Below are positions 13,532 through 58,835 of a DNA stretch of 64,000 nt, one piece after another. Numbering within the stretch: position 1 is the first letter of the stretch; each line of letters starts with the position of its first letter. The stretch comes from Octopus bimaculoides (lineage: Eukaryota): NCBI RefSeq assembly GCF_001194135.2, contig NC_068981.1, positions 11,035,095 through 11,099,094 on the forward strand, given 5' to 3'. The notes below the pieces were generated by a model. That model saw only the letters and a program-made list of their open reading frames with translations. It had not been told where the DNA came from and ran no database searches. The translations under genes and the position numbers were made by a program.

Positions 13532-14310
13532 GCTAAAAATGTCTTTCATTTGGAAAATTTCGTAATTTTTTAATGTTTCACCTCGTGTCATTTTATGAGA
13601 CTTCATGAGCTTAAACCAGATTTAAGGCTTTTCAAACCTCTTTTGGTTACGAGATATACAGATAAGGAAAGGTATCTCATATGACTTCCTTGCATGGGCT
13701 TTGATTATTTTTGCTATGATTTTCTATTAGAAAATCTTCATGGAAATCTGCGAAATTAGAATATAACATTATTATTGTTGTCATATTCTACAGGAGAGCT
13801 ACTTAAGCGTCACTATTCGTGAATTGAAATAAAGGACTCATATGATGTTGTTGAAGTAGATACCTGAATCTATAATCATGGAGGTAAAGAAATAATATCT
13901 AGACTATTACGTTTCCCTGCTACAAATTGCAGTTGAATTTTCTTTAATCGCATTCGTTGTATTAAAATGAGAAAAATACATTGAGTAAAATAGTTTTAGA
14001 TGTCTTCCCTGCAATACGACAAAACTGTTGCTGGAAAGGCTGTGGTCATAGATTTTCTGAATACGGCTGGCATGCGACGTAAGTGCAAGAATTCGTTATA
14101 TATTTGAATGCGGTAGAGTGCCACAAATATATCACAGTAAGTTTCAAAAAAGGAAGAGGATTAACTGGGAGGAACCATGCCATTAGATGCAGATACATAA
14201 AATCGAAAAGCAATCTTAGAAGGGATCTCCATTAAGCTCAACCGATTCAGTTTCTGGAAAGTACAGGATATTCACTATGAGAGCAGATCTGGTAATTAGA
14301 GCCAACTAGT

Positions 14311-14640
14311 AAAATTAATGGACATATTTCAGACTTTTTATATCTCTTCACTTCAGAGGGACATATTCTACGTGGCTGGTAAGACATGGTTCCGGGTTCA
14401 GCCCCACTGCATGGTACCTACTATCTTCTCGGGCCGACCAAAGCCTTGAGAGTTAAAGAGTGAAATTAATGGACAAGTTTAAGTTATTTTGTACCTTTTC
14501 ACTTCAGTAGAGCATAGTCTACGTGGCTGTTAAGACAGCCACATGGTTCTGGGTTCAGTCCCATTGCATGGCACCTACTATAGTAGCGGGCCGATCAAAG
14601 TCTTGAGAGTAGATTTGGTAGACAGAACCTGTAAGAAGCC
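14311..14640 (+). repeat. Diverged tandem duplication (period about 151) of flank plus SINE-head fragment
   Basis: AAATTAATGGACA...CACTTCAG...CTACGTGGCTG..AAGACA..ATGGTTC.GGGTTCAG.CCCA.TGCATGG.ACCTACTAT...GGGCCGA.CAAAG.CTTGAGAGT occurs twice with the same internal SINE deletion. Confidence 0.75.
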
Positions 14641-17871: not shown

Positions 17872-18030
17872 GGCGCAGGTGTGACTACGTGGTGTAAAGT
17901 TATTTTCGCAACCACATGATTTCGGGTTCAGTGCCACTGTGTGGCACCTTCGGCTAGTGTCTTCTATTAGAGACTTGGGACGACTAAAACCTTGTGAGTG
18001 GATTTGGTAGATGGGAACTGAAACTCGTTG
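17872..18030 (+). mobile_element. SINE 5' half (same family as 13172)
   Basis: GGCGCAGGTGTG...GGGTTCAGTGCCACTGTGTGGCACCTT...CCTTGTGAGTGGATTTGGTAG. Confidence 0.85.
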
Positions 18031-18046
18031 TATATATATATATATA

Positions 18047-18800
18047 CAACAGGGGCAGTGCATGAGATGGGAGGAATACGTGGTCAGTCGCAGAATCTCA
18101 TGGAAGGAACTTTGGGCTTGGGAACAAGCAAGAACATCCTTCCTGATCAAGTCTACCTTCGACGTTCTACCCTCACCGGCGAACTTAGTCCGATGGAACA
18201 TAAAAACAACCGATGAATGTGGATGCGGAGAGAAAGCGACGGTGAGACATGTTCTGTCAAGCTGCAGACTAGCACTAGAAAGGTATACATGGCGCCATAA
18301 TCAAGTCCTCAGCGTCATAAGCGCAGCGCTCAAGGAGAAGATCGATGGATACAATAGGGGAGAGTACCCCTAAGTGGAAAAACGCAGGAAAATATACTTC
18401 CAGAAGGAGGGAGAAGGACATAAGATCAGGCCTCCAAATAGAGCATGCGTGGGCTAAGATTACGCGCCCTCCATTATCAGTTAAAGTTTAGACAGTGTCA
18501 CGTGACAACTTGCTGGAGCCTAGCAGCGGGAAGTTTAGACAGTGTCACGTGAAAACTTGCTGGGGCAGCCTGCTGGAGCCTAGCAGCAGGTATAAAAAGG
18601 GGAATTTGACATGACAATCAGTCGGACGCTGACACTCGTTGATGCTGCATCGAAGAGGCCAGGGAATAGAAGAAAGAAGACACCTCCGAAAGGGGGGCCC
18701 CGCCACGTCAAAACGGTAGAGGAGTAGGGGCCGAAACCGGACGTGGTTCCTCCTGATGATGTCTTGTGCTAACTGGATCCTATAAAGGAGCTGTTGTGGT
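18047..18800 (+). mobile_element. HERO-like (RLE-clade) LINE 3' fragment with internal deletion
   Basis: ORF 18011-18373: QGQCMRWE..SRRISWKELWAWEQARTSFLIKSTFDVLPSPANLVRWN...CGCG..TVRHVLSSC..ALERYTWRHNQVL (CCHC knuckle region typical of HERO/R2-group elements). The 3' part CCGAAACC...CTGATGATGTC resembles HERO 3' ends as I recall them. Confidence 0.75.
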
Positions 18801-21978: not shown

Positions 21979-22155
21979 GATTGTTGGCGATCTTTTTCCT
22001 CCGTCTACCTTTTCCTTGGACTTTCCTGTGTCACCTGCTACTGAAGAAGAGCTGTGCTCGAAACGTAAAACACACTTTCTTTCATTCCCTGTGCGTCTTT
22101 TAATACTTTGCGTCCTCGCGTCGTTGTTTTTCTTGTGTTTTTACTTCTTTATTCT
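21975..22155 (+). mobile_element. Penelope-type terminal-repeat fragment with an HHR core
   Basis: 22041-22067: CTGAAGA-A-GAGC TGT GCTC-GAAAC-GTA; stem I does not pair in cis. Confidence 0.55.
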
Positions 22156-42199: not shown

Positions 42200-43346
42200 A
42201 TTTTGTTTGTTTTTTTTTCTAGTTAATTCTAGTTAATTTTTGTTTATTTTCAGATCAGTAAAATGGAATGTCAAGTTAAGAAAAACGATCATTTTCGACA
42301 CCTCATTTTTGCTTTTAATCAAGGTTCTAAGCCCGCAAAAGCTGCTCGCGACATTTGTGCTGTGTATGGAGAGGGTGCCATAGCTGAAAGAACCGCTCGT
42401 GATTGGTATGCCAAGTTCAAAAATGGAAATTTTGACCTCAAAGACGCACCTCGTTCTGGCCGTCCAGTTGAGTTCGATGAAGAGCGATTAAACCAACTTT
42501 TGCACGAAAAATCTCGTCAAACGACAAGGGAGCTGGCAGAGAAAATGGAATGCGTCCACACTGCTATAAAGAAGCATTTTCACTCGATGGGAAAGGTTCA
42601 GAAATACGGAGCATGGGTACCGCATGCTTTAAGTGACAACAACAAAGTCAACGAGCCATAATATCCGCTGGTTTGCTTGCTCGTCATCGCTCAACACATG
42701 GACACAAGCAACCATTTCTTTACCGAATCGTTATTGGCGACGAAAAATGGTGCCTGTACATCAATATGAAGCAACGTAAGGAATGGCTTAGCCCCGGTAA
42801 ACAAGCGACACCGCGCGTGAAACAAGATCTTCATCCACGTAAAACGATGTTGTGCGTATGGTGGGCCTGGGAAGGGATTATCCATTACGAATTGATTGAA
42901 CGGAACCAAACGATCAACGCGGAACTCTACGTTCAACAGATGGAACGACTCAACACAGCTAATCAAGAGAAAAGACCTAATCGTCAGCATGGAGTTCTGC
43001 TGCACGACAACGCCCGCCCTCATATCGCCAATATGACCAAGGAAGCCATTTAAACACATGGCAGGGAAGTGCTGCCACACCCACCGTGCTCTCCTGATTT
43101 GGCACCAACTGATTTCCACCTCTTTCAATCTCTTTCAAATACTATGCCCGGAGTTTCGTTCAATACTGATGCAGAATTGAGAGCTTGGATGGATCGATTT
43201 TTCGTATCGAAATCGGGTGATTGCAAATCTTGTTGAACGTTGGGAAGAAGTTGTAAACAACAAGAGTGAATAGTTATTATTTTTTATTAAACCTTTTAAG
43301 AAATTCAAATTTAAAAACCAGCGGGAATGTAGTTGCCAACCCAATA
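42200..43346 (+). mobile_element. Mariner (DD34D) transposon lacking the left TIR
   Basis: Right TIR ...GCGGGAATGTAGTTGCCAACCCAA followed by TA at 43345-43346; no matching left TIR found upstream. Confidence 0.92.
42263..43270 (+). pseudogene. Mariner transposase pseudogene
   Basis: HTH region, WVPHAL, GDEKW, HDNARPH and SPDLAPTDFHLF, with exactly 34 codons between the second and third Asp. Frameshift near 42650, in-frame TAA at 43051 and a C-terminal deletion relative to the 35-kb copy. Confidence 0.92.
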
Positions 43347-44182: not shown

Positions 44183-44384
44183 GTGTGTATAATCGTTATC
44201 TTTAAATAACAGATTCTTCATGTTAGATATGATCAAATTCTATGATCAGATAGCGAAAAATCGCCCTCTCAAGTAACATGACAAATTAGTTTCTTTCACT
44301 TCTATATTTAAGAGGTGAGGAATTATGTACATTATTTACATTGTTTGAATTTGAGTGATAATTGTCCTCATCTTGTTTGTTGTT

Positions 44385-44434
44385 AACACAACGTTTCGGC
44401 TGATGTAAACGTTCGGTTGATATCATCAGGTGTC
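44385..44434 (-). ncRNA. Type-I hammerhead motif with a rearranged stem II
   Basis: GACAC-CUGAUGA-[25 nt with no canonical stem II]-GAAAC-GUU-GUGUU; stem I is intact. Confidence 0.5.
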
Positions 44435-44517
44435 TTGAGTCCTCATTCCTAAGGTATTTTTCGATGTTGTTGTTGTTATTATTATTATTAATATATCACC
44501 ATTATGATTATTGCTCA

Positions 44518-44590
44518 GGTCACTGCCTGGAATCGAACTCGGAATCTTGGGGTTAGTAGCCCGCGCTCTTAACCACTACGCCATATGACC
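44518..44590 (-). promoter_or_regulatory. tRNA-like Pol III head (A and B boxes) inside the PLE terminal repeat
   Basis: 73 nt; A box TGGCGTAGTGG, B box GAGTTCGATTCC; acceptor GGTCAT/GTGACC and D stem pair, T stem broken; resembles tRNA-Arg(ACG) from memory. Confidence 0.7.
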
Positions 44591-45124
44591 GTGGGCAATT
44601 ATGGAGTGAATTTTATGGTTTATAAATCTAATATTTTCCTATCCTTCCTTTATACCGGTTCCCACATACTATTCATATCTGCATATGTGCTGCTTCTAGC
44701 ATATGTGCTGCTTCTTTTAGTTTTCGTATTTTCTAGTAGTGTTCCCTGTCTATTATCTTAACTTCATCCCACAGAGGGAGGTGGTCTCCATTCTTCCGTA
44801 CATGATCAGCTCTACCCGATTTATCAATATCTCTTCGTGTCACAGCTTTGCGATGTTCCTCTACCCTTATTTTGAGGGGGCGACATGTCTCGCCTTTATA
44901 AAACCTACCTTTTCGAACGTACTTTATTTCATACTAGATTACCAAATGTTATTCGCATTACTACAGACAGAGAACACCACTGGAAAATACGAAAACTAAA
45001 AGAAGCAGCACATATGCTAGGAAACAACAGACTCCTAAGCAGACCGATACGAATAGCATATAGGAACCGGTATTAAGGAAGGATAGGAAAGTATTAGATT
45101 TATAAGCACTCCATAATTGCCCAC

Positions 45125-45197
45125 GGGTATATGGCGTAGTGGTTAAGAGCGCGGGATACTAACCCCAAGATTCCGAGTTCGATTCCAGGCAGTGACC
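45125..45197 (+). promoter_or_regulatory. tRNA-like Pol III head, second copy
   Basis: Near-identical to 44518-44590. Confidence 0.7.
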
Positions 45198-45367
45198 TGA
45201 ATAGATCGTATGCTGCAAAATGAGGGTGATTTGCCAAGTATTTCTAACAGTCAAACGACTACATATACACTGCTTCATTATTATTAAGTAAGTTAGTTGG
45301 ATAGATCCCATTGATCAGCAAGCAAAGATATGAATCTTGTGTTGTGTTGTGTTCCCACTTTTGAAGA

Positions 45368-47592: not shown

Positions 47593-47621
<29 letters not shown>

Positions 47622-47628
<7 letters not shown>

Positions 47629-48261
47629 ATTATTATTTCTAAAACTCTCAAAGAGAGATATTCAGTAACAGTTTTTTTAAAGTAAAGGCTATTTGCCAAC
47701 ATAGTGGAGCTCTCCTGGAAAGGACAATTGTTACTGTTGCTTAGCATCCAGTAAACATCGTATCTAGCTGGCTGTACGAAATCTGTGTCCTCATATTTTC
47801 GAATAGGGAGTCTAGCACCCCCACCCAGCACAAAGCAACATCTGTGGATCGGTTTCTGGAGCAACAGTGACAATCGTCCCTTCCAGGAAAGCCACATTAT
47901 GTTTGCAAATAGCTTTTAATTTAAAGAACTGTTACTGAACATACCTCTTTGAGAGATTTAGAAATAATAAAGTTTCTATATATTAAATCAAGTACTGTAA
48001 GTCACTTTGAAAACGATATATTTTCGAACAGGAGTTCACCTAGCCAAGCAGCTGCTCTGTGTTACTAAAGGGCAAAAATCCAGAAACCGATCCACAGATG
48101 TCGCTTTGAGCTGGATGGGGGTACTGCCCCCCCTCCCTATTCGAAAATATAAGGACACAGATATTGTGTCGTATAGCCACCTGGAATGATGTTTCCTGGG
48201 GTTAAACAAGAGTAACAATCGTGCCTTCAAGGACAGCCACATTATGTTGGCAAATAGCCTT

Positions 48262-48263
<2 letters not shown>
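47622..48263. mobile_element. HHR-repeat family locus 1: inverted partial copy (47622-47860, -) plus about 1.2 tandem monomers (47861-48263, +; period 345)
   Basis: GCCACATTATGTT repeats at 47891 and 48236; 47622-47860 is the reverse complement of the forward unit; flanked by (TA)n on both sides. Confidence 0.85.
48056..48098 (+). ncRNA. Degenerate type-I hammerhead (core mutated)
   Basis: UCUGUG-[UUACUAA]-AGGG caaaaa UCCA-GAAAC-CG-AUC-CACAGA: perfect 6-bp stem I, but the CUGANGA box is destroyed. Confidence 0.6.
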
Positions 48264-48308
<45 letters not shown>

Positions 48309-48327
48309 NNNNNNNNNNNNNNNNNNN

Positions 48328-48388
<61 letters not shown>

Positions 48389-48506
48389 GGCGCAGGCGTG
48401 GCTGTGTGGTAAGTAGCTTCCTTCCCTACTACATGGTTCCGGGTTCTGTTCCTCTGTGTGGCATCTTGGACATGTGTCTTGTACTATAGCCTCGGGGTGA
48501 CCAAAA
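48389..48506 (+). mobile_element. SINE 5' part (same family as 13172)
   Basis: GGCGCAGGCGTGGCTGTGTGGTAAG...ACTATAGCCTCGGGGTGACCAAA. Confidence 0.85.
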
Positions 48507-48540
48507 TACACATAAATACACGTATGTATGTATATGTGTT

Positions 48541-48586
<46 letters not shown>

Positions 48587-48906
48587 TGAATGTTTGTGCG
48601 TGTTTCTGTGTGTCTGCGCATATGTATATATAATGTATACATATATACATACACACGCACGTTATATATGTGTATATACAGCATTTTTGTACGGACAATA
48701 TATCGAAAATGGAGAATTTTTTAATTAACTCACACAGGTCGTTGAAATTGCATATCTTGCTACAGTAACTCTTGTTCTACACTATTTATTCATTCTGTTA
48801 TTCTTCGTCGCTGTCATAAAACGTGTTTCAAACAAATATTGCGAGACGTCATTAAATTCTTTAAGGAGGAAGGGAGCGCATATTTTTGGGTGATATATAT
48901 ATATAT

Positions 48907-49270
48907 AAGCAATGTTAAATCTCTGAACGAGGTATTAACAGTAACTGCACGATAAAGTGAAGTATATTTGCCACTTAAATGTGGCTGACCCCGAGGGGTG
49001 GATGTTACTGTTGCTTTTAGCCCCAGGAGAACATCTCCTCCAGCTGGCTATCGACACACTTGTGTCCTGTCTGTATTTGCCAAGGGAAGTTATCCTTCTC
49101 ATCTTGATCTACGATACGTACGTACTCGAGTTTCAGGGTTATTTCCCTTCTTCAGCGTACGACAATCGCCGACCTTCGATGGCAAATATATATAAGTTTT
49201 TCCAGTGAAATTATTCACTGATATCGAAAAACTGAAAACAAGCAATGTTAAATCTCTGAACGAGGTATTA
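48907..49270 (-). mobile_element. HHR-repeat family locus 2: 333-nt monomer plus the start of the next unit, running into a gap
   Basis: Identical 31-mer AAGCAATGTTAAATCTCTGAACGAGGTATTA at 48907-48937 and 49240-49270; body homologous to loci 1 and 3. Confidence 0.85.
49117..49161 (-). ncRNA. Complete minimal type-I hammerhead ribozyme motif
   Basis: CGUACG-CUGAAGA-AGGG aaauaa CCCU-GAAAC-UCGA-GUA|CGUACG: all core nucleotides, 6-bp stem I, 4-bp stem II, palindromic stem III ACUCGAGU. Predicted cut between 49123 and 49122. Confidence 0.9.
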
Positions 49271-49917
49271 NNNNNNNNNNNNNNNNNNNNNNNNNNNNNN
49301 NNNNNNNNNNNNNNNNNNNNNNNNNNNNNNNNNNNNNNNNNNNNNNNNNNNNNNNNNNNNNNNNNNNNNNNNNNNNNNNNNNNNNNNNNNNNNNNNNNNN
49401 NNNNNNNNNNNNNNNNNNNNNNNNNNNNNNNNNNNNNNNNNNNNNNNNNNNNNNNNNNNNNNNNNNNNNNNNNNNNNNNNNNNNNNNNNNNNNNNNNNNN
49501 NNNNNNNNNNNNNNNNNNNNNNNNNNNNNNNNNNNNNNNNNNNNNNNNNNNNNNNNNNNNNNNNNNNNNNNNNNNNNNNNNNNNNNNNNNNNNNNNNNNN
49601 NNNNNNNNNNNNNNNNNNNNNNNNNNNNNNNNNNNNNNNNNNNNNNNNNNNNNNNNNNNNNNNNNNNNNNNNNNNNNNNNNNNNNNNNNNNNNNNNNNNN
49701 NNNNNNNNNNNNNNNNNNNNNNNNNNNNNNNNNNNNNNNNNNNNNNNNNNNNNNNNNNNNNNNNNNNNNNNNNNNNNNNNNNNNNNNNNNNNNNNNNNNN
49801 NNNNNNNNNNNNNNNNNNNNNNNNNNNNNNNNNNNNNNNNNNNNNNNNNNNNNNNNNNNNNNNNNNNNNNNNNNNNNNNNNNNNNNNNNNNNNNNNNNNN
49901 NNNNNNNNNNNNNNNNN

Positions 49918-49954
<37 letters not shown>

Positions 49955-49955
<1 letters not shown>

Positions 49956-50200
49956 AAAGCTCGCTCTTCCACTGTCGTATTCCTTTTTGTAAAATTCATT
50001 GTTTGTATTACTGCACTTTGTTTGCCCAGACTGTTCAAGATATCTCTTCACTTTGTTGTCATTCATGGCTGCTCTGCCGGGGTCTCGAAACCTATTCTGG
50101 AAGTATTTTTTGTACATTGTTTTGTAATCTGTTCAAAAATTTCCTACTATTAGAGTTGTCACTTCAGTATCTTGAACAAGGTTATTACTTCTGTCAAAAT
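49955..50200 (-). mobile_element. Decayed LINE RT remnant (RTE-like)
   Basis: Across frames: KFLNRLQNNVQKILPE*.., FR.PGRAAM, EYDSG.R, resembling RL...ILPE.Q.GFRPGR...AYDSV.R. Confidence 0.45.
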
Positions 50201-51339
50201 CAAGTATCTCTAAGTGGGAATCAAATATCGTCGGAGACATGTCTTTCCGAGCAGATTAGATTGTGAAATACATCCCATGTGATACACTTACAAAAATCAA
50301 TCATTCTAGGCAGCTTCTATAATGAATAATTCACTTTCACCAAAAATCGAAATATATAAAGATATTTTAGGCAGAGAAATCATATTACAAGAGTTATCTT
50401 AACGTCTCTGTTTATAATTAGATTGAAATGTAAAATTAGCTAAAGCAATTACAATTCCGCTTCTTTTCGCCAACCTTTTGGTATTAATTTTGTAATTCCC
50501 CTTGCAGTATTTCAAAATTAGCTTGTTGATTAGCTCTTGTCATTTGTAAAAAAATAAATCCTCAAGCATTTTTACTTTCATTTAAAATTAAATCTAGAAC
50601 ATTTTATATTAGTTTACAAAAAATAAATAGATAAATAAAAAAAACAAAAACAAAAACAAACTAAAACAAATTTCGTTCGATAAAGCAAAGAAACGAATAA
50701 ACAAATAAAAGATGTTATTTTTGCCAGAAGGTAAGAATTTTGTAAAGTTTAAAATAATAATAATAAGAAAACGTAAAATCAATAACTTCGAATACAATCA
50801 ATGCTTTGCTCCCCTAAGGCACGAAAACATTCAATGTTTCAGATCTGACATGAGAACGGCAGAAGAAAAGAATAATATTAAGTAAAAGTTGTAATTATAG
50901 AGAGTTTATATTTAAGTGAAAATTTATTTTCTTTTAAAAGTTTACGAAGGAATGTGGGTTGATGATACGAAATAAATTTACGAAATAAATTTACCATCAC
51001 TAATTAACTGTTTTATACTGAGCCCTGCTCTTATGAGATAACACGTTGCTTATTTTAAGAGTATATACTAAATGAAATATATATACTGAGATAATAATAA
51101 TGAATACGAAAGTTGTGAAACTTTCTGCAAGATTTAATATAATTTCATTGATATTCTGACTCGCTGCATCACTATTCACACACAAACATACAGATTTCAC
51201 GCACACATGCGTAGTTATGTGTATAGCAACAAATCAATATCTTTATTTATTTATATATACACACACACAAACATATATACACACACGCTGTCTCAATCTC
51301 TTGATTCCAGGTACAATTCCGTTGAGTGACATCGTCGAA

Positions 51340-51419
51340 TGAATACATACATACATACATACATACATACATACATACGTACATACATACATACATACAT
51401 ACATACATACATTCATACA

Positions 51420-51450
<31 letters not shown>
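51340..51450. repeat. (CATA)n microsatellite
   Basis: Seen directly. Confidence 0.95.
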
Positions 51451-51455
<5 letters not shown>

Positions 51456-51633
51456 TATTATTAATAAATTATAGGGCAGCAAATAAAATTTTAGAAATTT
51501 TATTTACCACCAGTGGTCTAGAGAGAATAAAAATCAGTCAATAGACTATATATTATTCATTTAAAATACAGAGATGCCTATAATAGGACATCTGACCCGC
51601 TAGAAAGAGCAGCAAAAAACATATACACCCCCC

Positions 51634-51681
<48 letters not shown>

Positions 51682-52455
51682 GAATATATGAGTACAGGAC
51701 GTCCCCAACAGTAACATACAGAAAGTAACATAAAGAACGACCTTTCATCAGTTGTCGGCTGTCTGTTTACTCCTCATCTCGAGCATTGAACTGTGACGCA
51801 GTAGTTTATAGTATACAATGCCACGTATACACAGTTATAAACACAACCATACATATTTACTGCTGGATGCATTGCCTTACCATTTCTACACCTGCAAACA
51901 TGAATTTATAATGCTTAAACAATGAAATTTTGAAATGTTTCCTTTGAAGGTGTGGAAACATCAGAGAGCTGCCTAATATTAATGTTAATACTGATGTCTT
52001 GTCAGAATGTATAAGCCATTCGAGGTAAATGTATTCGTATAATTAATGTTCTTAGCTGTGACATCTAGTATATTTAAGCTTTCAAGAATGTCGATTGATT
52101 TTCTCAAGTTAAGTGTGTTTCACTTTGAAGGTAAAAGCCAGCGCAGTTTTCGTACAGCAGTAGAAACATATTGAAACAACTACAGTAATACGATTCCAGT
52201 TTTATGAATCATAGACACACAGATATATACGCATATGTATAGTAATGTTTCTTGTTACATCAAGTTAAAAATNNNNNNNNNNATATATATATATATATAT
52301 ACATGTATGTGTGTGTGCATAATATAACAGAGATGCTTGCAGAAGAATAAACTTATATCAAATCCCATATCTGTATGGGAAGTATAATGAGAGATAAGAT
52401 CTCAGCAATTAGAGTCCACAATTCATGTTAGAGTCTTATCAATAAAACTCAGGAT

Positions 52456-52696
52456 GAGTGGTTCTGAACTGGTGGTCATATGTCCTTTCGGTGGCCATAT
52501 AAAATCCATGTGCAAAAGATTAGCTATATTTCTACAATGCACAAAATATTCAACATTTTTCTTACATTATTCTTAAAAATATTTAATCATAAAGATATAA
52601 TAGGAGCTTTTAGCTATCTAATTAATATGATTTTCCCCACCCTTGAATAAAATAAGAATCAAAGCGGTCCATGGGGAAAATGGTTGAGAACCACTG
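52456..52696. mobile_element. 241-bp hAT/Charlie-like MITE
   Basis: TIRs GAGTGGTTCTGAACT and TGGTTGAGAACCACTG (12/15 match); decayed 8-bp flanks CTCAGGAT and CTCTAAAT. Confidence 0.6.
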
Positions 52697-52719
52697 CTCT
52701 AAATAAATGTTATAAAGGT

Positions 52720-52998
52720 CCCACGGGCATATGGCGTAGTGGTTAAGAGCGCGGGCTACTAACCTCAAGATTCCGAGTTCGATTCCAGGTAGTGACCTGA
52801 ATAATAATAATAATGATGATAATAATAATGATAATAATAATAATAATAATAACATCGAAAAATACCTTAGGAATGATAACCCAGGTTCGAAATTTCCCCA
52901 AGACTCCTGATGAAGGCTGGAGGGTATATCAGCCGAAACGTTGTGTTAGCAGACAAGATGAGGACAAATATCCTCCAATTGTAAATCATGTAAATAAT
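52720..52998 (+). mobile_element. tRNA-like head plus (AAT)n plus HHR module (same family as 44310-44600), without an ORF
   Basis: Head 52725-52797, (AAT/GAT)n 52801-52851, CATCGAAAAATACCTTAGGAATGA body, HHR, GATGAGGACAA tail. Confidence 0.85.
52902..52947 (+). ncRNA. Minimal type-I hammerhead motif
   Basis: GACUC-CUGAUGA-A-GGCUG gagggUaUaU CAGCC-GAAAC-GUU-GUGUU: 5-bp stem II, palindromic AACGUU stem III, one stem I mismatch (52905), weak GUU triplet. Confidence 0.7.
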
Positions 52999-53914
52999 GT
53001 TCTAGTTAACTGTTCTACTGAAATAAAATGCATATACACAGAAGTTTGAATTCCATAAGCGCACTTATGGACTTTAAACTTCTCGCTGCTATTTCATATT
53101 CCCTAACTTTATATGAAAAATGTCTGCAAACACTTTTTCCAACGTCATAAATGTCGGTTCCTTAGATTCAAGTAAAAGAGAACGTTTAAGTGTAATAATA
53201 TATTTGTATATATTTTGGTGATGATACTTCAAGGGAAATTTCACTGTCTTATTTCACAGTTAATAAAGGAATCTACGGTATATTTTGAGAAGAGACGGGA
53301 AGGTGTGTGCTTACTTTGCAGATTTTAAATATCAAACACAGAGTAGACCTTGGAGCGAGAGGGGAAGTCACTAAATTACTGAAAAGGTCGCAAACAGCGT
53401 CGAAAGAACTTTGACTAACAAATAACCGACTGATTGCTTAATCTACACATTAAACAAATAATCGTTTCGTTAGTTATATATGTAAACATTGACTAACAAT
53501 TAAGAAGTGGAATTGAACCTGTGCGTGTGTTATCAATATTGGCGTAATGACTCTCCCAAGACACAACAGCATATAAAATCCTTATAGGTAATTATTTTCC
53601 GATTATCTTTTTTCTCAGCTTACTGGATGTATCTACGCGTATATCCGACTTCTAGCGCGTGGTTTCCATTTTACATTCGTTCATGATCAAGCGGTCAGGG
53701 TGATAGTCCAATAGAGTAGATGTCTTGTCTCACATTTGGGGGAAAGGAGTTATCGTGAGCTGGGTCTCAAAGATCTCGATTCCTATACACAAAGGTAGAA
53801 TATGAAATCCGAGGGACGGAAGAGACACCAGAAGGCATTCAATCCATTATTCTAGCGATTCAAAACCAATTCATCGCCTGTTCACAGCTGCTTCTTTCTT
53901 CCTTCTTTTCTTTT

Positions 53915-53990
53915 TGTTTGTTTGTTTGTTTGTTTGTTTGTTTGGTTGTTTGTTTGTTTGTTTGTTTGTTTGTTTGTTTGTTTCTTTCTT
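53915..53990. repeat. (TTTG)n microsatellite
   Basis: Seen directly. Confidence 0.95.
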
Positions 53991-54018
53991 TCTTTCTCTC
54001 TTTCTTTCTGTGTCCTTA

Positions 54019-54493
54019 TGTGACACAGAACGCTTGTGTCACATAGCCAAGTGGAAACGGTATTTCTTGGGGCTAAATAACAGTAGGATTCTTCCATTTC
54101 CCGGGACTACTACAATAAGTTGGCAACAAACCATCACTTTATCGTTCTGCTATTTTATAAGTCTCTCTGAGAGATTTAGAAATGCAATATTTCTAATTTT
54201 GTAGATCAGTGAATTTATTTCACTTGAAACTCTATATGTTTTCAAAGGTGAATAAGCATCGACAGCTAGCAAGTCAAACTACTCCAGACTGATGAAGAGC
54301 AATGATTCTGAAACTAGTCTTTGGATGTTGGCTTTGCTGGGTGGAGGTGCTTATCTTCCTTGTTTGAAAACATAAAGATACAGAACACTTGTGTCACATA
54401 GCCAACTGGAAACGGCGTTTCCTGGGGCTAAATAGCAGTAGCATCCTTCCCTTTCCTGGGATTGCCACATTAAGTTGGCAACAAACCATCACT
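54019..54493 (+). mobile_element. HHR-repeat family locus 3: about 1.3 tandem monomers (period 355)
   Basis: CAGAAC.CTTGTGTCACATAGCCAA.TGGAAACGG at 54026 and 54381; flanked by (TTTG)n and (TA)n plus a gap. Confidence 0.85.
54283..54325 (+). ncRNA. Complete minimal type-I hammerhead ribozyme motif
   Basis: UCCAGA-CUGAUGA-AGAG caauga UUCU-GAAAC-UA-GUC|UUUGGA: 6-bp stem I, 4-bp stem II, palindromic ACUAGU stem III, GUC triplet. Predicted cut after 54319. Confidence 0.88.
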
Positions 54494-54647
54494 GTATATA
54501 TATATATNNNNNNNNNNNNNNNNNNNNNNNNNNNNNNNNNNNNNNNNNNNNNNNNNNNNNNNNNNNNNNNNNNNNNNNNNNNNNNNNNNNNNNNNNNNNN
54601 NNNNNNNNNNNNNNNNNNNNNNNNNNNNNNNNNNNNNNNNNNNNNNN

Positions 54648-54679
<32 letters not shown>

Positions 54680-54687
54680 ATTAATTT

Positions 54688-55452
54688 ACAAAGGTACCGT
54701 TAATTCTATTATTATCCAATGTCACTAATTTAAGAATGATAATAACAGAATCAACGATAAAGGCGACTGCAGGCCAAAAATGGCATTTAAAAAGCCGAAG
54801 GATTATAATTAATCAAAGGACATACCTAAGTATGTCTACCTGCTTGAAATGACAGTCAAAACTCGTTATTAAGTCGCCAAAAATACACTGGTAATTACTA
54901 CAGAAATCAAACGAAGGCAAAATTGGTTAAGACAATCTACTTACATACATGTGGATTTACGTGGACTAGTTTCTGCATTGACATTAATATGCCTTAGCTT
55001 CTTCAGCACGCATCACCATAACAGAGATCGTTAACCTGTCCTGTTATAATCATTCTTAAATTAATGACATTGAATAATAATAGAAGTAACGGTACCTTTG
55101 TTTATTAATTTTATATTATAATCTCGTAAAATTCGGCAACGAGATTATGTTACACTAGAAAGCTGCTCCGATTTCGGCGCGAAACGAATCAGTAGTGGCA
55201 CAGATTTCGTGAAGGACTGGTTAACGATCACTATTTATGGTGATGCGTGCTAAAGAACCTAAGGCATATTAATGTCAATGCAGAAACTAGTCCACGGAAT
55301 TCCGCATGTATGTAAGTTGACTGCCTTAACCAATTTTGCCTTCGTTTGATTTCTGTAGTAATTACCAGTGTATATTTGGCGATGTAACAACGAGCTTTGA
55401 CTGTTATTTCAAGCAGGTAGACATACTTAAGTATGTCCTTTTATTAATTATA
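54688..55452. repeat. Two interleaved long inverted repeats (A-B-A'-spacer-B'), fold-back-like element
   Basis: A 54688-54748 versus A' 55041-55101 (57/61 identical); B about 54804-55041 versus B' about 55214-55452 (about 238 bp, roughly 85-90% by eye). Confidence 0.9.
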
Positions 55453-56733
55453 TATATAGATAGATAGATAGATATAGATATATATGCAGAGAGAAAGAGA
55501 GAATGGGAAAGAGAAAGAGAGAGACGGAAAAAGAAAGAGAGAGAGAGAAAGAGTGATATATATATATATATATATATANNNNNNNNNNNNNNNNNNNNNN
55601 NNNNNNNNNNNNNNNNNNNNNNNNNNNNNNNNNNNNNNNNNNNNNNNNNNNNNNNNNNNNNNNNNNNNNNNNNNNNNNNNNNNNNNNNNNNNNNNNNNNN
55701 NNNNNNNNNNNNNNNNNNNNNNNNNNNNNNNNNNNNNNNNNNNNNNNNNNNNNNNNNNNNNNNNNNNNNNNNNNNNNNNNNNNNNNNNNNNNNNNNNNNN
55801 NNNNNNNNNNNNNNNNNNNNNNNNNNNNNNNNNNNNNNNNNNNNNNNNNNNNNNNNNNNNNNNNNNNNNNNNNNNNNNNNNNNNNNNNNNNNNNNNNNNN
55901 NNNNNNNNNNNNNNNNNNNNNNNNNNNNNNNNNNNNNNNNNNNNNNNNNNNNNNNNNNNNNNNNNNNNNNNNNNNNNNNNNNNNNNNNNNNNNNNNNNNN
56001 NNNNNNNNNNNNNNNNNNNNNNNNNNNNNNNNNNNNNNNNNNNNNNNNNNNNNNNNNNNNNNNNNNNNNNNNNNNNNNNNNNNNNNNNNNNNNNNNNNNN
56101 NNNNNNNNNNNNNNNNNNNNNNNNNNNNNNNNNNNNNNNNNNNNNNNNNNNNNNNNNNNNNNNNNNNNNNNNNNNNNNNNNNNNNNNNNNNNNNNNNNNN
56201 NNNNNNNNNNNNNNNNNNNNNNNNNNNNNNNNNNNNNNNNNNNNNNNNNNNNNNNNNNNNNNNNNTATATATATATATATATATGTAAAGAAACATAGAA
56301 ACCAGCAATACAGACGTAAACATTCAGTAAAATGTATTTCAGTTTAATTACTCGTAAGAAAAAAATAATTTATCATCATGTTAATAAAACTATTGCGAAA
56401 AACATTTTATGAAATCATTATTGAACAAATGTTCTCCAATTTTCTTCTCAAACTGGAATAATTTGCTGTTGAGCAGAGTAAATATTGTTGTCAATTATTA
56501 AAGAGGTATCTGATATTTAATGATACCTTATATGTCGAGTCATCGTTCGTAGAGTACAACTGAACAACAATATGTTTTTTTCTTATCATAGGCTTGTCAT
56601 ACAGAGTAAACAGAGTTTGATAGTGGATCAATTAAAATTTCTTAATTTGTCAGAAATATCTGCATTAATGAAAACGAGTTGAAACGGTTAAACAAAGTTT
56701 GTAAAGAATTTTGTTTCAGTAGCGTTTTATAAA

Positions 56734-57159: not shown

Positions 57160-58835
57160 CTAAAACAAAACTAAGACCTATAATAGCAGGTCCGGCATGC
57201 GAAACCCACTGCCTCAGTAAATTTTGGACATCCTCTTAAAACCATTCCTCAAGCATATCAAAAGCTACACAAGGGACGACCTAGATATGCTCTATCACCT
57301 CCCTAAAACAATAAACAAAATTCACCCTACTAATATCCATCGATGTAATCAACCTCTATTCCAATATCCCCCACAATCTAGGAATAGAGGCAATTCAATT
57401 CTGGCTAGAGAATTACTCCAATGTACTCCCTCATCGCATCAAAAAAGAATTCGTAATAGAAGGGCTAAAATTCCTCTTGGAGAATAACTACTTTGGTTTC
57501 GAAGACAACTTCTATCGACAAAAATCAGGGACTGCGATGTGTACGAAAATGGCCCCCCCCACTCCTTTGCTAACCTAGTCATGTGATAACTAGAAATCAA
57601 TCATTATCGTAAGGTATTAGATAAATACGGCAGATCATTCTTCCTCTCCAAAGGAAGTAACTGGAAGACTTTCATTCTTTCGCATGAAAATTTGGATGGC
57701 TGTTTCATTCTTTGGCATGAAAATGTAGAGAGACTTCAAGAATTTCAAGCACTTATAAATGGACTTGAAATGAAGATTTAATTTAGGAGGGAATATAGCT
57801 ATCAACAACTTCCATTCTTCGACATCCTCCTTAAGAAATCCAATAACAAAATAAAAACTGATATATACTATAACTGGTCAACTTATGTCACCCCAGATAC
57901 ATTAGAATGAATATCCCCTTCAACCTAGCAAAAAGGATTTGTACTATAGTTTCCAATACAAGCACCAAGGACACGTGACTATATGAACTAAAGGATACAC
58001 TCATTACCAGGAACTATTCACCATCACTAATTGACATATGCTTTCAACGTGCCCTTCAACTCAACATCTACGAACTGAGACATCCCAAACTAAAGAAGCA
58101 TTTACAACCAGAAGCCTTACCATACATCTCCATACAAAAGCCCCATAACAATGAAGCCTTCGATACCATCCCCAAGAACATTCCCCTACTAAAAAGGGAC
58201 CACAGAATGAATTTAATCCTCCAAACTCACACCATCATGCGAAAAGTCTCTTAAAACAAGTCCAAGTACACTCGACAACAACACTGAAGCCGTTAGTAAA
58301 AAAATGCGGAAGACCTAACTGTGGGATATGCGTCAATTTAATCTAGGGATCAGAGTTCTCCTTCAATCAAGGATAACGTTTCACAGTGAAAAGCAACTTC
58401 ATATGTGCTTCGGAGAACCTGATATACGCACTAACCTGCTCAGGGTGTCGAGTGCAATACATAGGCCAAACCCAAAACAGCCTATGTCAAAGGATGGCTC
58501 TACATAGATCCCAGATCAAAATTCGAGAATACATAAAAATAGCATTCAGTGAACACATCGACATTTGCGCGACTATCGAACAACCCAGCTTCAGAAGTTT
58601 TCCCCTGTATAAATTCAGGGGCGATATAATATATGACACTACAACCAGGGCCTTAGCATAATACCCACGCAAATATTAGAAACGATATATTCAGACAGTC
58701 GCTACCCATGAATTTATTCAGAACAATTCCAATCACTGCTATTACTACAACAAGTTACTTTTAGATCACTTGACCATTCAAGAGTATTCCACCAACATCC
58801 TACCACTGTCATACCACTCGCGTATTTTTATTATT
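57160..58835 (+). mobile_element. 5'-truncated Penelope-like element (RT plus GIY-YIG), pseudogenised
   Basis: LRPIIAGPACETH.., LDILLKPFLKHIKSY, DV.NLYSNIP, FYRQKSGTAM, NIPFNLAKRICTIV, linker KCGRPNCGIC, then LIYALTCSGCRVQYIGQT..RMALHRSQI..FSEHI (GIY-YIG with CxxC). Many frameshifts. Confidence 0.92.

What the first reader, a model, noticed from the sequence alone, without database searches (positions are those of the whole stretch)
47622..54493. Candidate retrozyme-like system: a non-coding 333-355 nt tandem repeat family with a structurally conserved hammerhead
Seen: three loci (periods 345, 333 and 355) carry an HHR at the same position, about 60-67 nt upstream of a shared TGTGTC hairpin. 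All have a 6-bp stem I, a 4-position stem II with a 6-nt loop and a short stem III, but the sequences differ. Stem I is CGUACG/CGUACG, UCCAGA/UUUGGA or UCUGUG/CACAGA; stem III is ACUCGAGU, ACUAGU or a decayed ACCGAU. This is compensatory change, which indicates selection on RNA structure. No ORF is attached, and every locus is flanked by microsatellites. Known: metazoan non-LTR retrozymes are tandem repeats of a few hundred nt with minimal type-I HHRs that yield monomeric circular RNAs and are thought to use PLE machinery. Inference: this is such a family, with several diverged subfamilies; solo PLE terminal repeats are the alternative. Whether it is already catalogued needs a search.
Basis: partly seen in the sequence, partly recalled or inferred. 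Interest (0 to 1): 0.88.

Follow-up and report, generated by a model that had tools for sequence, protein, structure and literature searches.

The report
Octopus hammerhead-bearing Penelope-dependent short retroelement
The three loci are old, partly decayed insertions of a 333-355-nt non-coding octopus repeat that carries a hammerhead ribozyme motif and has the insertion marks of Penelope-like retrotransposons, so it is a new example of the known animal "retrozyme" kind and not a new kind of system.

Summary
The repeat family is real and occurs only at the three named loci in this window. A fourth copy lies elsewhere in the Octopus bimaculoides genome. Two loci (B, C) carry a complete type-I hammerhead: 2 hits in 64 kb against 0.005 expected by chance. 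Locus A keeps the helices, but its catalytic core is destroyed.

The helices covary. Stem I differs at 5 of 6 pairs between subfamilies. Between two 85%-identical copies, 6 of 9 changes are compensatory, and they keep an 8-nt palindromic helix III. That palindrome implies a ribozyme that works only as a dimer.

These are not tandem arrays. Each locus holds 1.1-1.4 units and one hammerhead. Locus B runs into a 647-N gap, so its length is unknown. Locus A is an inverted pair.

Every arm ends at one of two fixed 3' positions about 50 nt apart and then abuts (TA)n. Partial tandems, inverted 5'-truncated arms, an optional "tail" and AT-rich targets are the published signature of Penelope-like element (PLE) integration. 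A decayed Neptune/Nematis-type PLE lies 2.7 kb away.

Best reading: a non-autonomous, PLE-mobilised, retrozyme-like element. Self-cleavage and circular RNA are inferred, not shown. No Rfam hammerhead model matches it. It is a new member of a known kind, of moderate interest.

The parts
47594..47625 (.). (TA)16 microsatellite abutting the 3' end of the minus-sense arm of locus A
   Evidence: TRF. Perfect-run list and flank print.
47626..47862 (-). Locus A, left arm: an inverted, 5'-truncated copy. Its 5' end lies inside the hammerhead (only ...CCAGAAACCGAUC-CACAGA remains). Its 3' end is the 'long' end, carrying a 56-nt tail.
   Evidence: blastn, alignment, nhmmer hit 47845-47618 on the minus strand. 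81% identical to the right arm.
47863..48262 (+). Locus A, right arm: 1.16 units (period 345), ending at the 'short' 3' end followed by TGT(AT)n.
   Evidence: blastn offsets 47862->48207, alignment.
48056..48098 (+). Dead hammerhead of locus A. Stem I UCUGUG/CACAGA is 6/6 paired and stem II has 3 of 4 pairs. The core is UUACUAA instead of CUGANGA, and helix III ACCGAU is not palindromic.
   Evidence: Registered parts table.
48909..49270 (-). Locus B: at least 1.09 units (period 333) with the 'long' 3' end ...AACAUUGCUUA at 48909, next to (TA)8 at 48893-48908. The 5' side runs into the assembly gap 49271-49917.
49117..49161 (-). Complete type-I hammerhead of B: CGUACG-CUGAAGA-AGGG-AAAUAA-CCCU-GAAA-CUCGAGU-A-CGUACG. 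The predicted cut is after 49123. The 8-nt palindrome ACUCGAGU is predicted to form the helix III of a double hammerhead.
   Evidence: Descriptor scan. Homodimer MFE -32.7 against 2 x -11.1 kcal/mol, and it adopts the double-hammerhead fold.
54010..54497 (+). Locus C: 1.37 units (period 355). Its 5' end is at about 54010-54022, next to (TTTG)n(TTTC)n. It ends at the 'short' 3' end ...CCAUCACU, then GT(AT)n and the gap 54508-54647.
   Evidence: Internal redundancy 86.8% over 121 nt.
54283..54325 (+). Complete type-I hammerhead of C: UCCAGA-CUGAUGA-AGAG-CAAUGA-UUCU-GAAA-CUAGU-C-UUUGGA. The predicted cut is after 54319.
54377..54397 (+). Conserved GACACA...UGUGUC hairpin, 58-66 nt after the hammerhead. 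The other copies are at 54020-54042 (C), around 48165 (A+) and around 49058 on the minus strand (B).
   Evidence: Alignment and RNAalifold: all five sequences keep the stem, and it shows no covariation. Distances.
54680..55452 (.). Locus D: a second, unrelated family (unit about 470 nt) with the same architecture. The minus-sense arm is 54680-55040 and the plus-sense arm 55041-55452. The arms are joined head-to-head and are 92% identical. Both 3' ends point outward, into (TA)n on the left and (TA)3(GATA)n on the right. Hammerhead-like motifs lie at 55011-54959 on the minus strand (CUGAAGA, long stem II, ACUAGU palindrome) and at 55245-55297 on the plus strand (CUAAAGA, dead).
   Evidence: The relaxed dimer-type descriptor finds the 55011 motif, against a shuffle mean of 0.007.
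57168..58661 (+). Decayed, 5'-truncated PLE ORF: RT motifs (KLRPI..., ...DVINLYSNIPH..., ...YRQKSGTAM...) with stops and frameshifts, then a CX4CxxC linker (CGRPNCGIC), then a GIY-YIG endonuclease (LIYALTCSGCRVQYIGQT). It has no sequence similarity to the repeat family.
   Evidence: Frame translations. Pfam GIY-YIG E=6.5e-4, below the curated cut-off. 61% identity to O. bimaculoides LOC106872478. 61% identity to a GIY-YIG protein.

Best explanation
The three loci are separate, old insertions of a short non-coding retroelement of an octopus genome, with a unit of 333-355 nt and three diverged subfamilies. The element carries a type-I hammerhead at the tip of a long imperfect hairpin, followed by four or five conserved small hairpins. 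It encodes nothing.

How it spreads (inferred from the anatomy). It is copied into DNA by the reverse transcriptase/GIY-YIG endonuclease of an autonomous Penelope-like element. The enzyme cuts AT-rich DNA, here (TA)n, sometimes on both strands. It starts reverse transcription at one of two internal sites of the RNA, about 170-178 and about 212-214 nt downstream of the ribozyme cut site. It often stops early. This yields 5'-truncated inserts, inserts with or without a roughly 50-nt 'tail', and head-to-head inverted pairs.

Template (inferred). Inserts are longer than one unit, so the template was multimeric or circular.

Ribozyme (inferred, not shown). Helix III is only a 6-8-nt palindrome, so the hammerhead is predicted to cut only when two copies pair, that is, in multimeric transcripts. 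Cutting would release unit-length RNA that a tRNA ligase could circularise, as in animal non-LTR retrozymes.

The copies in this window are relics. Each has one hammerhead, one hammerhead is dead, and none can release a monomer on its own.
For: SHOWN
- The family and its register.
- Hammerheads far above chance: 2 observed against 0.005 expected.
- Stem I is 6/6 paired in all four copies although the sequences differ. 5 of 6 pairs are doubly changed between B and C.
- B against the 85%-identical copy E (L001 14157-14425): 9 differences in 45 nt. 6 of them form three compensatory pairs, one in stem I and two that keep helix III palindromic (ACUCGAGU to AUCCGGAU).
- The predicted homodimer of B and of E is the double hammerhead and is 5-10 kcal/mol better than two monomers.
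- Unit RNAs fold more stably than shuffles: z = -4.1 to -5.7.
- Two fixed 3' ends: short for C+ and A+, long for B-, A- and E.
- 5 of 6 arm ends in the window, plus E, abut (TA)>=6, against 0.004 expected per end.
- Inverted arms with outward 3' ends and a tail on one side only, in A and independently in family D.
- A PLE RT/GIY-YIG remnant with a CX4CxxC linker lies in the window.

FROM PAPERS
- PLE insertions are partial tandems with inverted 5'-truncated copies, a 30-40-bp tail at one end and a (TA)n bias linked to the CX2-5CxxC linker (PMC8557442).
- A purified PLE protein cuts both strands at AT-rich DNA and starts reverse transcription at two internal sites, which explains the tail (PMC11167929).
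- Animal non-LTR retrozymes are 170-400-nt, low-GC, type-I hammerhead repeats (PMC7229834).
- They are thought to be non-autonomous PLE derivatives (bioRxiv 10.64898/2026.07.22.740005).
- Metazoan type-I hammerheads have a 6-bp helix I, a 4-bp helix II and a short palindromic helix III, and they act as dimers (PMC4209133).
Against: - No locus has two hammerheads, so no monomer or circle can come from these copies.
- No Rfam hammerhead model matches.
- All copies have A10.1-U11.1 where, from my own knowledge, natural hammerheads usually have G10.1-C11.1. Activity is therefore uncertain.
- E has U4 changed to C, and A+ has a destroyed core.
- The tail is 49-56 nt here and about 120 nt in D, longer than the published 30-40 bp.
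- The nearby PLE remnant shares no sequence with the family, and no autonomous partner was identified.
- C has (TA)n only on its 3' side, so the claim that (TA)n is the target is not proven.
- In the one PLE tested in vitro the hammerhead was dispensable for insertion, and no cleaved RNA ends were seen in RNA-seq.
- Only four copies were available, so no formal covariation statistic was possible.
Confidence: 0.62

Rival explanations
1. The element is PLE-dependent but has no circular-RNA stage. The hammerhead is an inherited passenger or a protein-assisted processing signal of the PLE untranslated region. Inserts longer than one unit come from tandem genomic transcripts or from template switching by the reverse transcriptase.
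For: In vitro, PLE insertion did not need the hammerhead, unprocessed RNA was the main substrate, and no RNA-seq reads ended at the cut site (PMC11167929). Here no locus has two hammerheads. The 3' ends lie 170-214 nt from the cut site, not at it.
Against: Compensatory changes keep stem I and, notably, the intermolecular palindrome of helix III. That is hard to explain unless pairing of two ribozyme copies matters. The unit RNA is unusually self-paired, as in known retrozyme circles (PMC7229834).
Confidence: 0.25
2. The loci are merely 5'-truncated ends or solo pseudo-LTRs of a full-length autonomous PLE, not an independent short element.
For: PLE pseudo-LTRs carry hammerheads, and retrozyme consensus sequences match pseudo-LTRs in frogs. 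A PLE remnant lies 2.7 kb from C. A further copy, E, lies 3.4 kb from another PLE fragment in L001.
Against: In A+, B and C the sequence runs through both 3'-end sites and reaches the next hammerhead after only about 110-130 nt, with no ORF. This holds in three subfamilies that are 62-73% identical, so the short unit itself was the template. The PLE remnant shows no similarity to the family in blastn or nhmmer.
Confidence: 0.08
3. It is a satellite or minisatellite that spread by unequal crossing-over or segmental duplication, or a SINE moved by a LINE (RTE, CR1 or Dong/R4), with a hammerhead-like motif of no consequence.
For: Octopus genomes are rich in SINEs and in RTE/Dong elements (PMC8967140). 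Microsatellite 3' tails occur in some LINE/SINE pairs (my own knowledge).
Against: The inserts are dispersed and short, with precise shared 3' ends, variable 5' ends and outward-facing inverted arms. There is no tRNA-like head and no B box. There are no long arrays. The hammerhead occurs far above chance and its helices covary.
Confidence: 0.05

Closest known systems
Metazoan non-LTR retrozymes (Cervera & de la Pena 2020, NAR, PMC7229834; mussel, coral, axolotl)
   Same: Both are non-coding, low-GC units of a few hundred nt (here 333-355 nt, GC 37-42%). Both carry a type-I hammerhead with a 6-bp helix I, a 4-bp helix II and a short palindromic helix III that implies action as a dimer, as in amphibian retrozymes. 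The unit RNA is strongly self-paired. Both are presumed to depend on PLE enzymes.
   Different: In this window there are no arrays with two or more hammerheads, only 1.1-1.4-unit inserts and inverted pairs. The 10.1-11.1 pair is A-U. RNA circles and cleavage are untested. I found no paper in the searchable library that describes a cephalopod family.
Penelope-like elements and their pseudo-LTR hammerheads (Cervera & de la Pena 2014, PMC4209133; Craig et al. 2021, PMC8557442; Frangieh et al. 2024, PMC11167929)
   Same: Both show partial tandem inserts, an inverted 5'-truncated second copy, an optional tail that reflects two reverse-transcription start sites, AT-rich or (TA)n insertion sites, and a hammerhead upstream of the start sites.
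   Different: The family has no RT/GIY-YIG ORF, and its unit is about 340 nt instead of 3-4 kb. Its hammerhead is of the 'canonical metazoan' form (helix I 6 bp, helix II 4 bp), not the PLE 'min-HHR' form (helix II 7-8 bp, helix I 4-5 bp). The tail is longer, at 49-56 nt.
Newt/salamander satellite 2 and the Schistosoma Sm-alpha SINE hammerheads
   Same: Both are short dispersed or tandem repeats with type-I hammerheads that have a 6-nt A-rich loop 2. In newts helix III is too short for the monomer to cut (Forster et al. 1988, as cited in PMC4209133).
   Different: There is no sequence similarity, and the core-adjacent pair differs. The octopus copies show explicit PLE-type insertion marks.
Plant LTR retrozymes (Cervera et al. 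2016, PMC4918200)
   Same: Both are non-autonomous retroelements whose hammerheads are proposed to release circular RNA.
   Different: The plant elements have type-III hammerheads inside true LTRs, PBS and PPT signals, Gypsy-type mobilisation, and are 600-1000 nt long. None of these features is present here.

Membership tests
Hammerhead ribozyme, type I | Conserved core: C3 U4 G5 A6 N7 G8 A9, G12 A13 A14, A15.1-U16.1, and H17 not G | tested here: met
   Met in B (49161-49117) and C (54283-54325). Not met in A+ (core UUACUAA), in E (U4 changed to C) or in the right arm of D (G5 changed to A).
Hammerhead ribozyme, type I | Three helices around the core, with helix I open and helices II and III closed | tested here: met
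   Helix I is 6/6 paired in four copies, helix II has 4 bp with a 6-nt loop, and helix III is a 6-8-nt palindrome. Compensatory changes occur in helices I, II and III.
Hammerhead ribozyme, type I | Match to a curated covariance model (Rfam hammerhead families) | tested here: not met
   No hammerhead hit at gathering score, at E<=10 on 7.3 kb, or on 131-nt slices around either motif.
Hammerhead ribozyme, type I | G10.1-C11.1 pair next to the core (usual in natural hammerheads; from my own knowledge) | tested here: not met
   The pair is A10.1-U11.1 in B, C and E, and A.A in A+ and D.
Hammerhead ribozyme, type I | Site-specific self-cleavage | not testable with these tools
   This needs in vitro transcription of monomeric and dimeric constructs.
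Metazoan non-LTR retrozyme | Non-coding unit of about 170-400 nt with low GC, and no LTR, PBS or PPT | tested here: met
   Units are 333, 345 and 355 nt with GC 0.37-0.42. The ORFs in the loci have no Pfam match.
Metazoan non-LTR retrozyme | Head-to-tail tandem copies, so that two hammerheads flank a monomer | tested here: not met
   The loci hold 1.16, at least 1.09 and 1.37 units with one hammerhead each. B is unresolved because of the gap 49271-49917.
Metazoan non-LTR retrozyme | Unit RNA strongly self-paired | tested here: met
   Circular MFE z-scores are -5.2 (C), -4.1 (A+) and -5.7 (B) against dinucleotide shuffles.
Metazoan non-LTR retrozyme | Expressed as linear and circular unit-length RNA | not testable with these tools
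   No transcriptome data can be reached from here.
PLE-type insertion (element mobilised by a Penelope-like RT/GIY-YIG) | Partial tandem (pseudo-LTR-like redundancy) with a variable 5' end | tested here: met
   Redundancies are 57, 31 and 121 nt, and the 5' ends lie at different unit positions.
PLE-type insertion (element mobilised by a Penelope-like RT/GIY-YIG) | Inverted 5'-truncated copy joined head-to-head | tested here: met
   Locus A (junction at 47862/47863) and locus D (junction at 55040/55041).
PLE-type insertion (element mobilised by a Penelope-like RT/GIY-YIG) | [quoted passage not shown] | tested here: met
   Short end in C+ and A+; long end in B-, A- and E. In A and in D one arm is long and the other short. 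Tail length is 49-56 nt (about 120 nt in D) against the published 30-40 bp.
PLE-type insertion (element mobilised by a Penelope-like RT/GIY-YIG) | AT-rich or (TA)n insertion site | tested here: met
   5 of 6 arm ends in the window, and E, abut (TA)>=6, against a random expectation of 0.004 per end. Caveat: the 5' flank of C is (TTTG)n(TTTC)n.
PLE-type insertion (element mobilised by a Penelope-like RT/GIY-YIG) | An autonomous partner whose terminal region is homologous to the element | tested here: inconclusive
   A PLE remnant is present at 57168-58661 but shows no similarity to the family. The PLE-containing loci L001 and L002 gave no pseudo-LTR to compare.

The most novel reading that the evidence does not exclude
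Octopus genomes may hold several independent hammerhead-bearing non-autonomous lineages: this 340-nt family, the 470-nt family D, and a tRNA-derived SINE whose 3' module carries a PLE-type minimal hammerhead. All would ride on PLE enzymes. They would show directly, from insertion anatomy (dual-strand priming, two internal start sites, inserts longer than one unit), that animal retrozymes integrate by PLE-type target-primed reverse transcription of multimeric or circular RNA. If the abundant octopus SINEs belong to this set, PLE-driven, ribozyme-linked retroposition would account for a large share of the octopus repeat expansion and could be a rich source of small circular RNAs.
Probability: 0.15. 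Interest if true: 0.6.

Novelty: new member of a known kind. Interest (0 to 1): 0.36.

Why it matters
Animal retrozymes and their dependence on Penelope-like elements are already described, so the kind is known.

What these loci add:
- A cephalopod family, which I could not find described in the searchable literature.
- Clear structural evidence that such short hammerhead elements are integrated by the PLE mechanism: two fixed 3' ends (a 'tail'), outward-facing inverted arms and (TA)n junctions. The published link rests mainly on co-occurrence and sequence similarity in vertebrates.
- A clean example of selection keeping an intermolecular palindrome (helix III). This supports the idea that these ribozymes are built to cut only in multimers.

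A genome-wide census and RNA tests would show whether octopus tissues make such circular RNAs. The copies in this window are relics and are unlikely to have a function of their own.

Tried and rejected
- Rfam, four searches: no hammerhead hit. The low-scoring miRNA, snoRNA and other below-threshold matches fall on microsatellites and are artefacts.
- TRF: no 333-355-nt period, because fewer than 1.9 copies are present.
- ARAGORN: no tRNA genes. No Pol III B box in the units. So the family is not a tRNA-type SINE.
- Pfam on the ORFs inside the loci: nothing.
- More copies from public data. Two exact-pattern scans of metagenome contigs gave 0 and 6 hits. The 6 hits (L004-L009) look like chance: the two I checked have GC above 50% (L004, L006), and none has a second family motif.
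- Look-up of an ORF from locus B, in the hope of bridging the gap: not on record.
- PLE-based look-ups. L001 (O. bimaculoides) held one more copy and was useful. L002 (another species) held none. L003 was never scanned with the family profile because it did not become readable by scripts; the two family-motif searches over all fetched loci found nothing in it.
- Mariner-based look-ups L010-L012: neither of two family motifs occurs in them.
- The GIY-YIG search returned a single protein on a short contig.
- MAFFT misaligned helix III of the four hammerheads, so pairs were counted on a hand-registered table checked against the sequence. The count of structure pairs was not used. With four copies no formal covariation statistic is meaningful.
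- Family D as a distant member of the A/B/C family: rejected. It gets no nhmmer or blastn hit.

Full report
WHAT IS THERE

A self-comparison of the window (blastn) and a profile search (nhmmer) show one repeat family. It is present only at 47626-48262 (A), 48909-49270 (B) and 54010-54497 (C), and the loci are 62-73% identical.

But only 57, 31 and 121 nt are actually repeated. The loci therefore hold 1.16, at least 1.09 and 1.37 units, and Tandem Repeats Finder reports no such period.

A multiple alignment in the sense orientation shows that locus A is an inverted pair. A minus-sense, 5'-truncated arm (47626-47862) is joined head-to-head to a plus-sense arm (47863-48262).

The window is from an octopus. 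A decayed PLE ORF in it is 61% identical to an Octopus bimaculoides protein. A locus fetched from the O. bimaculoides chromosome assembly (L001) contains a further copy, E (14157-14425, minus strand), which is 85% identical to B.

ASSEMBLY GAPS

- Gap 48309-48327 separates (TA)n from (AC)n, outside element A.
- Gap 52273-52282 lies in unrelated DNA.
- Gap 49271-49917 truncates B. The 31 nt before it are collinear with the uninterrupted unit of C, so they are genuine. After the gap come (TA)16 and unrelated sequence.

B's true length is therefore unknown, at most about 3 units if the estimated gap size is right. Nothing here is coding, so reading frame does not arise.

THE HAMMERHEAD

A strict descriptor was run on both strands. 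It required the CUGANGA core, a stem II of at least 3 bp, GAAA, an A-U-closed helix III, H17 not G, and a stem I of at least 5 bp. It hits exactly two places in 64 kb: C (54283-54325, plus strand) and B (49161-49117, minus strand). 400 dinucleotide shuffles gave a mean of 0.005 hits, and none gave two.

Both motifs have a 6-bp helix I, a 4-bp helix II with a 6-nt A-rich loop, and a short palindromic helix III (ACUAGU in C, ACUCGAGU in B). This is the architecture described for canonical metazoan type-I hammerheads that work as dimers (PMC4209133).

Locus A+ keeps helix I (6/6 pairs) and most of helix II, but its core reads UUACUAA, so it is dead. The A- arm is cut off inside the motif.

No Rfam hammerhead model recognises any of them, even at E<=10 on 131-nt slices. 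All copies have A10.1-U11.1 instead of the usual G-C. I therefore call them hammerhead motifs by descriptor. Activity is unproven.

SELECTION ON STRUCTURE

With the register fixed by the core, helix I is fully paired in C, B, E and A+ although the sequences differ. 5 of 6 pairs are doubly changed between B and C. The chance of 6/6 pairing is 0.0033 per independent lineage.

The comparison of B with E is the most telling. There are 9 differences in 45 nt. 6 of them are three compensatory pairs: U-A to A-U in helix I, and two in helix III that turn ACUCGAGU into AUCCGGAU and keep it a perfect palindrome.

An 8-nt palindrome cannot form a hairpin. It can only pair with a second copy. ViennaRNA predicts the double-hammerhead fold as the homodimer minimum for B and E: -32.7 and -32.5 kcal/mol, against -22.2 and -27.6 for two monomers.

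Downstream of the ribozyme, RNAalifold finds five small conserved hairpins, including the GACACA/UGUGUC one, with little covariation. Whole units fold more stably than shuffles, with z from -4.1 to -5.7.

Four copies are too few for a formal covariation test.

INSERTION ANATOMY

Every arm ends at one of two unit positions.
- Short end: 170-178 nt after the predicted cut site, in C+ and A+.
- Long end: 49-56 nt further on, which for B- and E is 212-214 nt after the cut site; A- also ends here.

5 of the 6 arm ends in the window, and E, run straight into (TA)>=6. The random expectation is 0.004 per end. The 5' ends are at different unit positions. In A, both 3' ends point outward, one long and one short.

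This is the published signature of Penelope-like element insertions: partial tandems, an inverted 5'-truncated copy, a tail at only one end, and a (TA)n bias tied to the CX2-5CxxC endonuclease linker (PMC8557442). It also matches the biochemistry of a purified PLE protein, which cuts both strands at AT-rich DNA and starts reverse transcription at two internal RNA sites (PMC11167929).

A decayed, 5'-truncated PLE lies at 57168-58661. It has RT motifs, a CGRPNCGIC linker and a GIY-YIG domain. It has no similarity to the family.

A SECOND FAMILY WITH THE SAME ANATOMY

Just beyond the finding, 54680-55452 (D) is an unrelated element with a unit of about 470 nt.
- It has two head-to-head arms that are 92% identical.
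- Its 3' ends point outward, one long and one short, next to (TA)n and to (TA)3(GATA)n.
- It has a hammerhead-like motif with the same ACUAGU palindrome and a long helix II. The motif is intact at 55011-54959 and dead at 55245-55297.

A relaxed descriptor (core, perfect palindromic helix III, stem I of at least 5 bp) finds C, B, D and a SINE copy, against 0.007 expected.

INTERPRETATION

The unit closes on itself without any ORF in three diverged subfamilies. The short unit, not a full PLE, was therefore the template. That argues against 'solo PLE terminal repeats'.

The best reading is a non-autonomous, PLE-mobilised, hammerhead-bearing element. It belongs to the kind called metazoan non-LTR retrozymes (PMC7229834), which have recently been argued to derive from PLEs (bioRxiv 10.64898/2026.07.22.740005).

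The defining retrozyme arrangement, two hammerheads flanking a monomer, is not met at any locus here. Cleavage and circles are inferred only.

The copies are old. Redundant parts are 87% identical and the A arms 81%.

One real alternative is that the hammerhead has no role in making circles. That was the case for insertion in vitro by the one PLE tested. Inserts longer than one unit would then come from tandem transcripts or from template switching.

NOVELTY

I found no paper in the searchable library that links retrozymes or hammerheads with cephalopods beyond passing mentions. The kind is known, so this is a new member. Its modest added value is the clear PLE-type insertion marks and the covarying intermolecular helix III.

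Noticed in passing
window 54680-55452: A second, unrelated hammerhead-bearing short element (family D, unit about 470 nt). It is built as two head-to-head arms that are 92% identical. Both 3' ends point outward and abut (TA)n on the left and (TA)3(GATA)n on the right. The hammerhead-like motif at 55011-54959 (minus strand) is intact and the one at 55245-55297 (plus strand) is dead.
   Followed up: partly
window 52720-53010 (+), 44329-44595 (-), head only 45120-45203 (+): A tRNA-derived SINE with an (AAT)n run and then a 3' module carrying a PLE-type 'minimal hammerhead': CUGAUGA-A-GGCUG...CAGCC-GAAACGUU-GUGUU, with an unpaired A before helix II and the ACGU palindrome in place of helix III. 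The copy at 44429 passes the relaxed dimer-type descriptor. This suggests that some octopus SINEs may also use PLE enzymes.
   Followed up: partly
window 57168-58661 (+): A decayed, 5'-truncated Penelope-like element: RT motifs with stops and frameshifts, a CX4CxxC linker and a GIY-YIG endonuclease ORF (58386-58661). It starts right after an (AC)n run and is followed by (TTC)n. No hammerhead was detected in what remains.
   Followed up: partly
window 47594-55578: Four PLE-type short insertions (A, B, C, D) lie within 8 kb, with a PLE remnant 1.7 kb further on. (TA)n runs are dense here, and most assembly gaps in the window sit next to (TA)n or other microsatellites.
   Followed up: no
window 42263-43053 (+): A mariner-type transposase remnant split over two ORFs (HTH_48 E=3e-17; Transposase_1 E=9e-25). 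Close relatives occur in many unrelated assemblies.
   Followed up: partly
window 18011-18373 (+): A remnant of a non-LTR retrotransposon RT C-terminus (a weak zf-RVT match, E=0.014).
   Followed up: no
window 48390-48500 and 14308-14610: Further SINE-like repeats (GGCGCAGGCGTGGCTGTGTGG...GGTTCCGGGTTC...). One sits between loci A and B, and another forms a 157-nt, 2-copy tandem reported by TRF.
   Followed up: no
window 22041-22063 (+): CUGAAGA-AGAGC-UGU-GCUC-GAAAC resembles a hammerhead core with a helix II but has no helices I and III. It is probably chance.
   Followed up: no
window 51332-51400, 51629-51697, 48516-48580: Rfam mir-297, mir-1277 and mir-466 matches below the gathering score fall on (ATAC)n and (TA)n microsatellites and are low-complexity artefacts.
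   Followed up: yes
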